This document shows, one piece after another, positions 5,572 to 8,344 of a stretch of DNA of 24,666 nucleotides. The DNA lies in contig NW_021836268.1 of assembly GCF_006345805.1 (NCBI RefSeq), positions 1 to 24,666 of the forward strand. The letters are read 5' to 3'. This stretch comes from Octopus sinensis. Lineage: Eukaryota. Under the pieces are notes generated by a model, which was not told the origin of the DNA, made no database searches, and saw only the letters and a list, made by a program, of their open reading frames with translations. Positions within the stretch are counted from its first letter, which is position 1, and every line of letters begins with the position of its first letter. A program made the translations under genes and the position numbers.

Positions 5572-5840
5572 ATGGACCAACTTGCTAAATGTTTAGCCAG
5601 ACAAGAGAAGTTGCTAGTAGAACATGAATTTGAAGGGTTGCCAGTATCAGTCTAAGGGTAGAGTTCATTCTTGCTGGTCGTAGAACGAATTTCTTTGTTC
5701 CGATAGGCAGTATAATTGCAGAAGAGTACGCGATGCTATGTATGGGTAGGAGGGAGTGCATAAAATTTATAGCATTGCTGGAGGTTAGAGGACTTGATAG
5801 TGGGGGATCGGACAGCGAAGCCTTTCGTCCCGGCAAGTAA
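5572..5840 (+). pseudogene. Frameshifted ORF remnant at the outer end of the left palindrome arm
   Basis: MDQLAKCLARQEKLLVEHEFEGLPVS, then a -1 shift, LRVEFILAGRRTNFFVPIGSIIAEEYAMLCMGRRECIKFIALLEVRGLDSGGSDSEAFRPGK*. The paralogous C-terminus is on the minus strand at ~8220-8344. Confidence 0.35.
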
Positions 5841-6870
5841 GTTAGAGTTACTTCCATTTATTTTTTAATACAATGCAACAAGAGTTTTGGGGTTAAATGT
5901 AAAATATAAGGCCATCCAGTTATTTATATATTTACTTATTTAGCAGCTTTTCTCTGCCTACTTTATTGCCAGAAGGATAAGTGATAGAGACACAAAGTCT
6001 GAGATTCTATTATGGGGAGGGAGTGACGAATAATAGCCGTCATCCAATCAATAAATAGATAAATAAAGAAGTAAAGAGAATGCAATAAAAAATATATGAA
6101 AGCAAAAAGGATAACAATAATAAGAGAAAGATCATAATAAAAATTTATAATAAAAAAAGGGGATATAATAAAAGAATATGGACAGTAATAAAAATGGAAT
6201 TGGTAAATAGTGACTTAGTAAATAATAGCATAGGAATTATAAAGATAATTAAAGAGTAGTCAGAAATAGCATAATCGAATGGAGTAAAGTAAAATAAAAT
6301 AAGGTAATATGATAGGATCAGGTACATTAGCAAGTAAAGGGGTGAAAAGGCAAAATAATAATGATGATAACGAAACAATTGTAGAAAGACAGAACATATA
6401 AGACCCAAAATATTCTAATATAAGAATATTAAAAAATGTATTTAAAAAAATATGACAATGAAGACACGTGTTAATCATAGTTTGTTGTAAATTCAAAGCA
6501 GTATTACTTACTACAGTAATATGATAAAAATATAAAAGTATTCATTAAATTTCCGAGTATGTAAGGCAATGTTCAAGATATATGAGAAAGGGAATCGGGT
6601 CCGTATCAATGACTTAGTTGCGAGGGTTGGGCAAGCATTTATTTATATTTATAGCTTCAGTTAATAAAAGTACAAGATAAGGACTGAGGGCTATGATAAG
6701 ACACCAACATATAATTCAATGTAGTGAAATATAACACTTATAATATATAATAAAGGTATGGTATGATGTCAATAGGGTTAGGCAATCTATTACATGATAG
6801 ATGCGTTTGAGGACCAATTACCATAGATATACAAGAGTTATAAAAGGTATATTAAATTTATCGAAGGTAT
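5716..6870. repeat. Left arm of large inverted repeat
   Basis: Reverse complement of 7025-8344, apart from three indels. Confidence 0.95.
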
Positions 6871-7024
6871 ATTATTGCTGCCATATAATTTTGCAACTTA
6901 CGATATACAATTATTTATATTATTACCATAATTGTAAATATTACTGCTGCATCAGTGCAGTACAGCTCCCAAAATTACTGCAGAGCTTAGGACCACCTGC
7001 ATCAATACCTTTACTGCTGCATCA

Positions 7025-8344
7025 ATACCTTTAATTAATTTAATATACCTTTTATAACTATTGCCTAACCCTATTGACATCATACCATACCTTTATTACA
7101 TCCGCCTTAGCGAACGAGAGGTTTTATTTCAGTGGTGTTTGTTGGTTTTCCGTGGACAAGGTATCTCAAGAACCGCTGGATGGAGGTGGATAATACTTTC
7201 AGGGATGTTTGGCTTCAGGACTGGCACGAAGTGATTAGATTTTGGGATCGATCCGGTACAGGACAAGGATTCTGGATTATTTTTTGTTGTTTTTTTCTTT
7301 TTGTTTTTTTTTTTTACTTAATTTTTGAGTGCGGTCGGGTTCATATTTAATATTCTTGTTTGTGAGAGAAGTCGAGTTTATTTCAGATATTCTCATTTTA
7401 AAAATCATCTTTGGCTAATCGATGAGAGGACATTGGTGTTGCCCGGGCGAAGGTTTGCTCTCTCTGAGTGCTCTTATTATATATTATTCCTATTATATTT
7501 CACTACATTGAATTATATGTAGGTGTCTTATCATAGCCCTCAGTCCTTATCTTGTACTTTTATTAACTGAAGCTATAAATATAAATAAATGCTTGCCCAA
7601 CCCTCGCAACTAAGTCATTGATACATTTTTTAATATTCTTATATTAGAATATTTTGGGTCTTATATGTTGTCTTCCTACAATTGTTTCGTTATCATCATT
7701 ATTATTTTGCCTTTTCACCCCTTTACTTGCTAATGTACATGATCCTATCATATTACCTTATTTTATTTGACTTTTCTCCATTCGATTATGCTATTTCTGA
7801 CTACTCTTTAATTATCTTTATAATTCCTATGCTATTATTTACTAAGTCACTACTTACCAATTCCATTTTTATTACTATCCATATTCTTTTATTATATCCC
7901 CTTTTTTTATTATAAATTTTTATTATGATCTTTCTCTTATTATTGTTATCCTTTTGCTTTCATATATTTTTTATTGCATTCTCTTTACTTCTTTATTTAT
8001 CTATTTATTGATTGGATGACGGCTATTATTCGTCACTCCCTCCCCATAATAGAATCCCAGACTTTGTGTCTCTATCACTTATCCCTCTGGCAATAAAGCG
8101 GTCAGATAAAAGGCTGCTACATAAGTAAATATATAAATAACTGGATGGCCTTATATTTTACATTTAACCCCAAAACTCTTGTTGCATTGTATTGAAAAAT
8201 AAATGGAAGTAACTCTAACTTAATTGCCGGGACGAAAGGCTTCGCCGTCCGATCCTCCACTATCAAGTCCTCTAACCTCCAGCAATGTTACCAATTTTAG
8301 TCACTCCCCCCTACCCATACATGACCTCGCGTAGTCTTTTGCAA
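7025..8344. repeat. Right arm of large inverted repeat (interrupted by an insertion at 7099-7473)
   Basis: For example 7621-7641 is the reverse complement of 6421-6441, and 7490-7624 is the reverse complement of ~6603-6735. Confidence 0.95.
7093..7475 (+). mobile_element. Non-autonomous Helentron-associated (HINE/DINE-1-like) element
   Basis: 5' TTATTACATCCGCC; subterminal inverted motif GGCGAAGGT (7446-7454); 3' hairpin GCTCTC-TCT-GAGTGC (7457-7471) ending in TT. Absent from the opposite palindrome arm. Confidence 0.55.

What the first reader, a model, noticed from the sequence alone, without database searches (positions are those of the whole stretch)
5716..8344. ~2.6-kb interrupted palindrome whose arm identity falls from centre to edge
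Seen: the arms 5716-6870 and 7025-8344 face each other across a ~150-bp spacer that contains short CTGCATCAATACCTTTA repeats. Hand counts give about 98% identity at 6061-6441, about 93% at 5840-6060 and about 80% at 5716-5840, then no clear alignment. ORF remnants at both outer ends point inward (tail-to-tail). Inference: two old paralogous elements being homogenised by arm-to-arm conversion, a foldback element, or a tail-to-tail junction as made by Penelope-like elements or hairpin-ended replicons.
Basis: partly seen in the sequence, partly recalled or inferred. Interest (0 to 1): 0.7.

Follow-up and report, generated by a model that had tools for sequence, protein, structure and literature searches.

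The report
Decaying non-coding palindrome in octopus DNA
The 2.6-kb stretch is a real but ordinary long inverted repeat, with no genes, in a repeat-rich octopus genome; it is slowly decaying and is not a Penelope-like junction, a hairpin-ended replicon or an assembly error.

Summary
The palindrome is real. Window 5716-6870 pairs with 8344-7025 across a 154-bp spacer (blastn 95.6% over 727 columns, E=0). Four pieces interrupt the pairing: a 161-bp and a 45-bp left-only block, a 375-bp right-only block with a 6-9-bp target-site duplication, and the spacer.

The identity "gradient" exists only as a step. The outermost 57 bp are 81% identical and the ~960-bp body about 97-98% (permutation p=0.002). 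The innermost ~90 columns dip again to about 91% (p=0.07). The profile is U-shaped, not a slope from centre to edge.

Nothing in the arms codes. Twenty ORFs have no Pfam match, the "ORF remnants" have no real homologue among 1.84 billion proteins, and Rfam finds no hammerhead or other RNA family.

The window is octopus DNA: a retroelement ORF elsewhere in it is 82-91% identical to Octopus bimaculoides proteins. That genome is known to be rich in long inverted repeats that can form dsRNA.

Most likely the two arms arose in one event, as a foldback-type element or a local inverted duplication. Indels, a transposon hit and substitutions have eroded them since. I could not rule out two independent insertions, because the tools gave no access to octopus genome DNA. 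Interest is low.

The parts
5716..6870 (+). Left arm (1155 bp). It is purine-rich on the + strand (A 42%, purines 62%) and non-coding.
   Evidence: pairing with 8344-7025; composition; no Pfam match.
5716..5772 (.). Outermost 57 bp of the left arm, mirrored at 8288-8344. This edge is 80.7% identical between arms, against about 97% for the rest.
   Evidence: change point, permutation p=0.002.
6442..6602 (.). Left-only block of 161 bp, bounded by a 4-bp microhomology (GTAT). It is either a deletion from the right arm or an insertion into the left arm.
   Evidence: adjacent blocks overlap by 4 nt on the right arm, 7621-7624; sequence; no target-site duplication above chance.
6787..6831 (.). Left-only block of 45 bp, bounded by a 3-4-bp microhomology (CAA).
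   Evidence: blocks overlap at 7060-7063.
6871..7024 (.). Central spacer of 154 bp. The left part is a decayed ATT-type microsatellite. The right part holds short direct duplications, including the 20-bp tandem duplication carrying the 17-nt repeat at 6997-7013 and 7017-7033.
   Evidence: direct repeat families D1-D6; similarity of 6870-6943 to the window's ATT/AAT microsatellites.
7025..8344 (-). Right arm (1320 bp including the nested 375-bp block). It is the reverse complement of the left arm.
7099..7473 (.). Right-only block of 375 bp, flanked by a 6-9-bp direct repeat (7093-7101 and 7474-7482, 8 of 9 identical). The left arm carries that site once, uninterrupted, so this is a later insertion of another mobile element. 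It has an internal T-rich run at 7280-7315 and its family is not identified.
   Evidence: left-arm blocks overlap by 6 nt at 6748-6753; no protein homologue; no RNA family.

Best explanation
This is a non-coding quasi-palindrome of single origin in an octopus genome.

How it arose (inferred): the two ~1.1-kb arms were created together. Either they are the long terminal inverted repeats of one foldback-type non-autonomous element, or they come from a local inverted duplication. Over about 5773-6870 the arms were once identical.

What happened since (shown):
- The body has accumulated about 2-3% substitutions.
- One arm differs from the other by two microhomology-bounded blocks (161 and 45 bp).
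- The right arm took a 375-bp insertion of another mobile element, which carries its own target-site duplication.
- The centre carries short local duplications and a 154-bp spacer.

The divergent outer edge (inferred): the 57-bp outer edge (81% identical) is either an older, short, imperfect terminal repeat onto which the longer inverted repeat was later extended, or the part that the last arm-to-arm conversion did not reach.

What it does (inferred): the element has no gene. Its only foreseeable activity is structural. At the DNA level it has hairpin or cruciform potential, which the long spacer damps. If it is transcribed, it would form a ~900-bp double-stranded RNA stem of the kind that is hyper-edited by ADAR in octopus.
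For: - The palindrome, its blocks and its spacer are as described.
- The arms run to within ~75 bp of the symmetry centre on both sides and stop at the same outer position. One event explains this without any coincidence.
- The divergence is substitution-dominated: 37 substitutions (19 transitions, 18 transversions) against 4 gap columns in 950.
- One arm carries a private insertion with a target-site duplication, and the other arm shows the matching empty site. The arms have therefore evolved separately in a real genome.
- The identity profile is a step: 19.3% substituted, then 2.9% (p=0.002).
- Nothing codes. There is no RNA family and no tRNA-like head.
- The predicted stem has 905 arm-to-arm pairs and a z-score of -68.
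- The host is Octopus: a retroelement ORF at 20372-20659 is 82-91% identical to O. bimaculoides proteins.
- O. bimaculoides has an exceptionally high fraction of loci able to form long, near-perfect dsRNA, and the strongest hyper-editing signal among 19 species (PMC5625713).
- Longer spacers make palindromes more stable (PMC7999016).
Against: - No target-site duplication of the whole unit stands above chance. The best candidate is 6 of 7 bases, and 42% of random place pairs score as well. Transposition as one unit is therefore not shown.
- No second copy was found in the window or in any reachable collection. Those collections hold almost no octopus DNA, so this says nothing about copy number.
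- The arms lack the tandem sub-repeats of classical Foldback elements.
- In a working cut-and-paste element the termini are usually the best-conserved part. Here they are the worst.
- Transcription, editing and any small RNAs are untested.
Confidence: 0.5

Rival explanations
1. Two independent insertions of one ~1.15-kb dispersed repeat. This would be a SINE-like or other non-autonomous retroposon whose A-rich sense strand runs from the outer end towards the centre. The two copies landed 154 bp apart, tail to tail. The divergent outer 57 bp would then be a subfamily difference at the 5' ends.
For: - The window is packed with dispersed repeats and retroelement fragments.
- The arms have the strand asymmetry typical of retroposon sense strands (62% purine).
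- A step in identity at one end is what subfamily modules give.
- A decayed ATT-type microsatellite lies between the arms, and microsatellite tails follow other repeats in this window.
- Windows are picked because something odd is in them, so a rare coincidence is not strong counter-evidence.
Against: - Neither arm has its own target-site duplication above chance.
- No solo copy occurs in the 24.7-kb window.
- Both copies would have to be complete at both ends and lie within 154 bp of each other.
- The microsatellite is in the wrong orientation to be the tail of the left arm, and the right arm has no tail next to 7025.
- The arms' inner ends share nothing with the 3' ends of the window's other retroposons.
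Confidence: 0.27
2. Arm-to-arm gene conversion has shaped the identity profile. On this view the arms are as old as their edges suggest (about 10-20% diverged), and the ~960-bp body was reset by one or more conversion events that could not reach the edges of homology.
For: - The profile is U-shaped: 19.3% substituted at the outer edge, 2.3% in the body and 8.8% at the inner edge.
- Composition does not explain it.
- There are long runs of perfect identity, 157 and 179 columns.
- A lower conversion rate near the borders of homology is an established expectation for duplicated sequences (my own knowledge, not checked here).
Against: - Only 37 substitutions carry the signal, and the inner-edge rise is not significant (p=0.07).
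- The large indels and the 375-bp insertion have not been erased, so any conversion has stopped or works in short tracts.
- At 97% the body is far below the >99.9% identity of palindromes known to be kept alike by conversion.
- A single step fits a secondary extension of a short old inverted repeat equally well.
Confidence: 0.3
3. A tail-to-tail junction of Penelope-like retroelements, or the terminal hairpin or integrated remnant of a hairpin-ended replicon.
For: Only the geometry (inverted arms meeting at a short spacer) and a retroelement-rich neighbourhood.
Against: - No reverse transcriptase, GIY-YIG nuclease or replication-protein remnant in any open frame of 55 codons or more in 5588-8570.
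- The mirrored outer ORFs have no true homologue among 1.84 billion proteins.
- No hammerhead ribozyme, even at E<=10.
- No match in viral contigs.
Confidence: 0.02
4. An assembly artefact, such as a chimeric long read with a missed adapter or a haplotig joined in inverted orientation.
For: Short-spacer palindromes are a known product of such errors (my own knowledge).
Against: - The arms differ by 37 substitutions but only 4 gap columns.
- They also differ by two microhomology-bounded blocks and by a 375-bp insertion with its own target-site duplication, for which the other arm shows the empty site.
- Copies of one molecule would not differ in these ways.
Confidence: 0.03

Closest known systems
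Foldback-like transposons with kilobase-long terminal inverted repeats (Drosophila FB; Galileo of the P superfamily). From my own knowledge.
   Same: Arms of about 1 kb facing each other across a short middle. Most copies of such families have no coding capacity. The arms differ in length through indels.
   Different: No tandem sub-repeat architecture along the arms. No target-site duplication above chance. No transposase and no second copy found. The termini are the least conserved part.
Neighbouring inverted repeats and palindromic repeats that form long dsRNA and are hyper-edited by ADAR, including in Octopus bimaculoides (PMC5625713)
   Same: A long, nearly perfect intramolecular stem is predicted (905 pairs). 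The host genus is the one reported to have the most such loci.
   Different: Transcription and editing of this locus are untested. The palindromic frog Harbinger repeat described there is ~200 bp, not 2.6 kb.
Large sex-chromosome palindromes kept alike by arm-to-arm gene conversion (primate X and Y; PMC8327919)
   Same: Arms plus a unique spacer. The spacer and edges are less conserved than the arm body.
   Different: Those arms are tens of kilobases to megabases long, more than 99.9% identical (my own knowledge) and carry genes. These arms are 1.1 kb, 97% identical in the body, and gene-free.
Penelope-like elements with inverted pseudo-LTR arrangements (PMC8557442 for the family)
   Same: Inverted partial copies abutting each other.
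   Different: No RT/GIY-YIG ORF remnant and no hammerhead ribozyme motif.

Membership tests
Penelope-like elements | An ORF or ORF remnant with a Penelope-type reverse transcriptase and (in EN+ forms) a GIY-YIG endonuclease | tested here: not met
   Pfam scan at E<=1 of 15 open frames (55 codons or more) lying within 5588-8570, among 20 frames scanned across the window: no RVT or GIY-YIG match. phmmer of the outer ORF against 1.84 billion proteins: only spurious hits.
Penelope-like elements | A hammerhead ribozyme motif in the terminal repeats | tested here: not met
   Rfam at gathering score over the whole window, and at E<=10 over 4300-9000: no hammerhead. The only hits are microsatellite-driven miRNA noise.
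Foldback (FB-type) elements | Long terminal inverted repeats built of tandem sub-repeats | tested here: not met
   Long inverted arms are present. Tandem Repeats Finder finds no array along the arms, apart from an 18-bp x2.6 stretch and the 20-bp units next to the spacer.
Foldback-like or non-autonomous cut-and-paste elements in general | A target-site duplication flanking the whole unit | tested here: inconclusive
   The best candidate is 6 of 7 bases beside 5714 and 8344; 42% of random place pairs score as well.
Foldback-like or non-autonomous cut-and-paste elements in general | Multiple dispersed copies with the same ends | not testable with these tools
   No octopus genome DNA is reachable. 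There are no copies in the window. Scans of metagenome, viral and prokaryote contigs were empty or gave one chance hit.
Hairpin-ended replicons (parvovirus-like, linear plasmids) | Replication-initiator or structural genes between or beside the terminal hairpins | tested here: not met
   No protein family match in or beside the palindrome. No viral contig carries the arm 26-mer.
Palindromes maintained by arm-to-arm gene conversion | Near-identity of the arms (>99.9%) despite old age, with polymorphisms shared between arms | tested here: not met
   Arm identity is 95.6% overall and about 97-98% in the body. Shared polymorphism cannot be tested from one sequence.
dsRNA-forming inverted repeats (ADAR or hairpin-RNA substrates) | A long, nearly perfect intramolecular duplex | tested here: met
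   MFE -1589 kcal/mol against -570 +/- 15 for shuffles; 905 arm-to-arm pairs.
dsRNA-forming inverted repeats (ADAR or hairpin-RNA substrates) | Transcription through both arms, with A-to-G clusters or small RNAs mapping to them | not testable with these tools
   No expression data are available here.

The most novel reading that the evidence does not exclude
The clean body between two diverged edges records kilobase-scale arm-to-arm gene conversion in a cephalopod autosomal palindrome. The locus would be kept as a long hairpin because its transcript is used, as an ADAR sponge or substrate or as a source of hairpin-derived small RNAs. It would then be functional, not a dead repeat.
Probability: 0.07. 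Interest if true: 0.5.

Novelty: new member of a known kind. Interest (0 to 1): 0.18.

Why it matters
It matters little on its own. Long inverted repeats are common in octopus genomes, and this one has no gene and no sign of activity. Its modest value is as a worked example. An apparent identity gradient in a palindrome turned out to be a step at the edges. A private transposon insertion in one arm gives an internal proof that such a structure is genomic and not an assembly error. If expression data showed it to be transcribed, it would be one more of the dsRNA substrates behind the heavy non-coding RNA editing of cephalopods.

Tried and rejected
- I first guessed a penaeid shrimp from the microsatellite load. 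That was wrong: one search points to Octopus.
- Searches for other copies all failed:
  - arm ORF 7634-7912 against the 5.8-billion protein set (nothing);
  - insert ORF 7111-7347 (nothing);
  - a 26-mer and a 22-mer from the arms against metagenome contigs (the single hit lies in a 62% G+C bacterial contig and matches only 25 bases);
  - viral contigs and prokaryote genome contigs;
  - exact look-ups of two window ORFs and of P0001, none on record.
- Locus L001, fetched through P0038, comes from an unrelated organism.
- Sensitive blastn of both flanks, both private blocks and the spacer against the window found only low-complexity matches.
- Target-site duplication scans for the whole unit and for each arm alone were at chance level.
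- The 3' ends of the window's microsatellite-tailed repeats share nothing with the arms' inner ends.
- A logistic model with linear distance from the centre was weak (p=0.075-0.17), because the profile is not monotonic. My first definition of G/C sites was biased, and I replaced it.
  - One search printed arm-to-arm differences by position. They lie in non-coding DNA, are not gene breaks, and are not repeated here.
  - The four homologous blocks were aligned apart and only their match/mismatch indicators were pooled.

Full report
**What the window is.** It has no long open reading frame, G+C of 23-44%, 68 Tandem Repeats Finder rows of microsatellites and many dispersed repeats. It has no Rfam family at gathering score and no tRNA. 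A retroelement tail ORF at 20372-20659 finds 773 relatives. The best are Octopus bimaculoides 'uncharacterized proteins' at 82-91% identity; everything else is at 79% identity or lower, mostly under 72%. The window is therefore octopus nuclear DNA. My first guess of a shrimp was wrong.

**The observation.**
Blastn of the left half against the right half gives four blocks:
  - 5716-6441 with 8344-7621 (95.6% over 727 columns, 28 mismatches, 3 gaps, E=0);
  - 6603-6753 with 7624-7474 (96.7%);
  - 6748-6786 with 7098-7060 (100%);
  - 6832-6870 with 7063-7025 (89.7%).
- Beyond 5716 and 8344 identity is at the random level.
- The spacer is 6871-7024. The 17-nt repeat named in the finding is there twice, as a 20-bp tandem duplication straddling the spacer/right-arm border.
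- Folded as one strand, the 2629 bases give -1589 kcal/mol against -570 +/- 15 for dinucleotide shuffles, with 905 arm-to-arm pairs.

**What interrupts the symmetry.**
- Two blocks are present only in the left arm: 6442-6602 (161 bp) and 6787-6831 (45 bp). Each is bounded by 3-4 bases of microhomology. These look like deletions from the right arm or insertions into the left.
- One block is present only in the right arm: 7099-7473 (375 bp). It is flanked by a direct repeat of 6-9 bases, and the left arm carries that site once, uninterrupted. This is a filled-site/empty-site pair inside the palindrome itself. Another mobile element inserted into one arm after the arms existed.
- The left part of the spacer resembles the window's decayed ATT/AAT microsatellites. 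Its right part is a set of short direct duplications.

**The identity profile.** I aligned the four blocks apart and pooled only their match/mismatch indicators.
- There are 946 ungapped columns, 37 substitutions (19 transitions, 18 transversions) and 4 gap columns.
The direction is right; the amplitude was overstated.
- A change-point scan with permutation places the one significant break after the outermost 57 columns (5716-5772: 19.3% substituted; the rest 2.9%; p=0.002).
- In the remainder there is no outward trend. The best further cut is near the inner end (about 6735), where divergence rises again (8.8% against 2.3%, p=0.07).
- The higher outer rate holds for A/T and G/C sites separately, so composition does not explain it.
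- The profile is a clean ~960-bp body between two rougher edges, not a slope from centre to edge.

**Coding and RNA content.**
- Twenty open frames in and around the structure have no Pfam match at E<=1, apart from noise.
- The left one, searched with phmmer against 1.84 billion representatives, gives three weak hits. They are to long, internally repetitive proteins, at 24-44% identity over 18-45 residues. I take them as spurious.
- An arm ORF and the insert ORF have no relatives in the 5.8-billion set.
- Rfam at E<=10 over 4300-9000 shows only microsatellite-driven miRNA noise and no hammerhead.

**Other copies.** This is the weak point.
- The window holds no second copy of the arm, the flanks, the private blocks or the spacer.
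- The public collections reachable here contain essentially no octopus DNA. Scans with conserved arm words were empty or gave one chance match, and exact protein look-ups found nothing.
- Copy number, and whether copies elsewhere are solo or paired, therefore remain unknown.

**Interpretation.**
- *Not an artefact.* The arms have separate histories: substitutions rather than indels, two microhomology-bounded blocks, and a private insertion with a target-site duplication.
- *Not a Penelope-like junction or hairpin-ended replicon.* Every defining feature that could be tested failed.
- *Single origin favoured (confidence about 0.5).* Both arms stop at the same outer position and run to within ~75 bp of the symmetry centre. 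One event explains this without coincidence.
  - The event could be a foldback-type non-autonomous element. In that case the 57-bp, 81%-identical edge may be an older, short, imperfect terminal repeat, and the body a later extension of it.
  - It could equally be a local inverted duplication.
- *Main rival (about 0.27).* Two independent insertions of one ~1.15-kb retroposon-like repeat, tail to tail, with the edge as a 5' subfamily difference. The purine-rich strand asymmetry (62%) fits this. The lack of any per-arm target-site duplication, of a tail in the right place and of a solo copy in the window speaks against it.
- *Gene conversion (about 0.3).* Arm-to-arm conversion is compatible with either origin and would explain the U-shaped profile. 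It rests on 37 substitutions and cannot be shown from one sequence.

**What it does.**
- Probably nothing by design.
- At the DNA level a 1.1-kb inverted repeat is a hairpin or cruciform risk. A spacer of 154 bp plus the arm indels makes it much more stable (PMC7999016). The scarred centre is what one expects of a palindrome that has survived; that is my inference.
- If the region is transcribed, it would form a ~900-bp dsRNA stem.
- O. bimaculoides is reported to have an exceptionally high fraction of loci able to form such stems, and the strongest hyper-editing signal among the animals compared (PMC5625713). Structures like this one are therefore a known, common feature of this genome.

**Verdict.**
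- Observation: partly confirmed.
- Novelty: a new member of a known kind (a long inverted repeat or foldback-like structure).
- Interest: low.
- Decisive evidence: purely descriptive, and listed under next steps.

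Noticed in passing
window 4460-4783: A second, smaller palindrome lies 0.9 kb upstream. It is ~324 bp, with arms about 86% alike (93% in the outer 73 bp), almost no spacer, and termini AGTAAAGATTATTTGCC.../...GGCAAATAATCTTTACT. It looks like a MITE-type foldback and is unrelated in sequence to the large one.
   Followed up: partly
window 20372-20659, 23148-23420, 24011-24226 (+ strand): Short ORF fragments of a retroelement tail. The first was searched and is 82-91% identical to many O. 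bimaculoides 'uncharacterized proteins', with 773 relatives in all. None of the three has a Pfam family. In locus L001 a relative of this tail lies ~1.1 kb downstream of an ORF with an RVT_1 hit, so it is probably the C-terminal part of a non-LTR retrotransposon protein. The other two fragments are similar by eye only and were not searched.
   Followed up: partly
window 4128-4291, 10634-10790, 11768-11932 (-), 20171-20262: A ~160-bp dispersed repeat family, 77-82% alike between copies. In two cases an (AAT)n microsatellite follows directly, which fits a SINE-like element with a microsatellite tail.
   Followed up: no
window 246-585, 1309-1697, 13805-14239: Another dispersed repeat family occurs in both orientations, 74-87% alike, with AC-microsatellites beside it. 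Examples are 436-585 against 1697-1551 and 1309-1506 against 14239-14042.
   Followed up: no
window 11105-11468 and 17546-17815: Very long trinucleotide arrays: (TCA) x121 and (ATT) x91. There are 68 tandem-repeat rows in 24.7 kb overall. The resulting poly-Ser, poly-Asp and poly-Ile 'ORFs' are artefacts of these arrays.
   Followed up: no
protein P0015: A UniRef 'hypothetical protein' attributed to Escherichia coli is 79% identical to the octopus retroelement ORF. This probably reflects cephalopod DNA contamination in a bacterial assembly record.
   Followed up: no
window 995-1141: A 75-bp unit is duplicated in tandem (2.0 copies, 93% identical).
   Followed up: no
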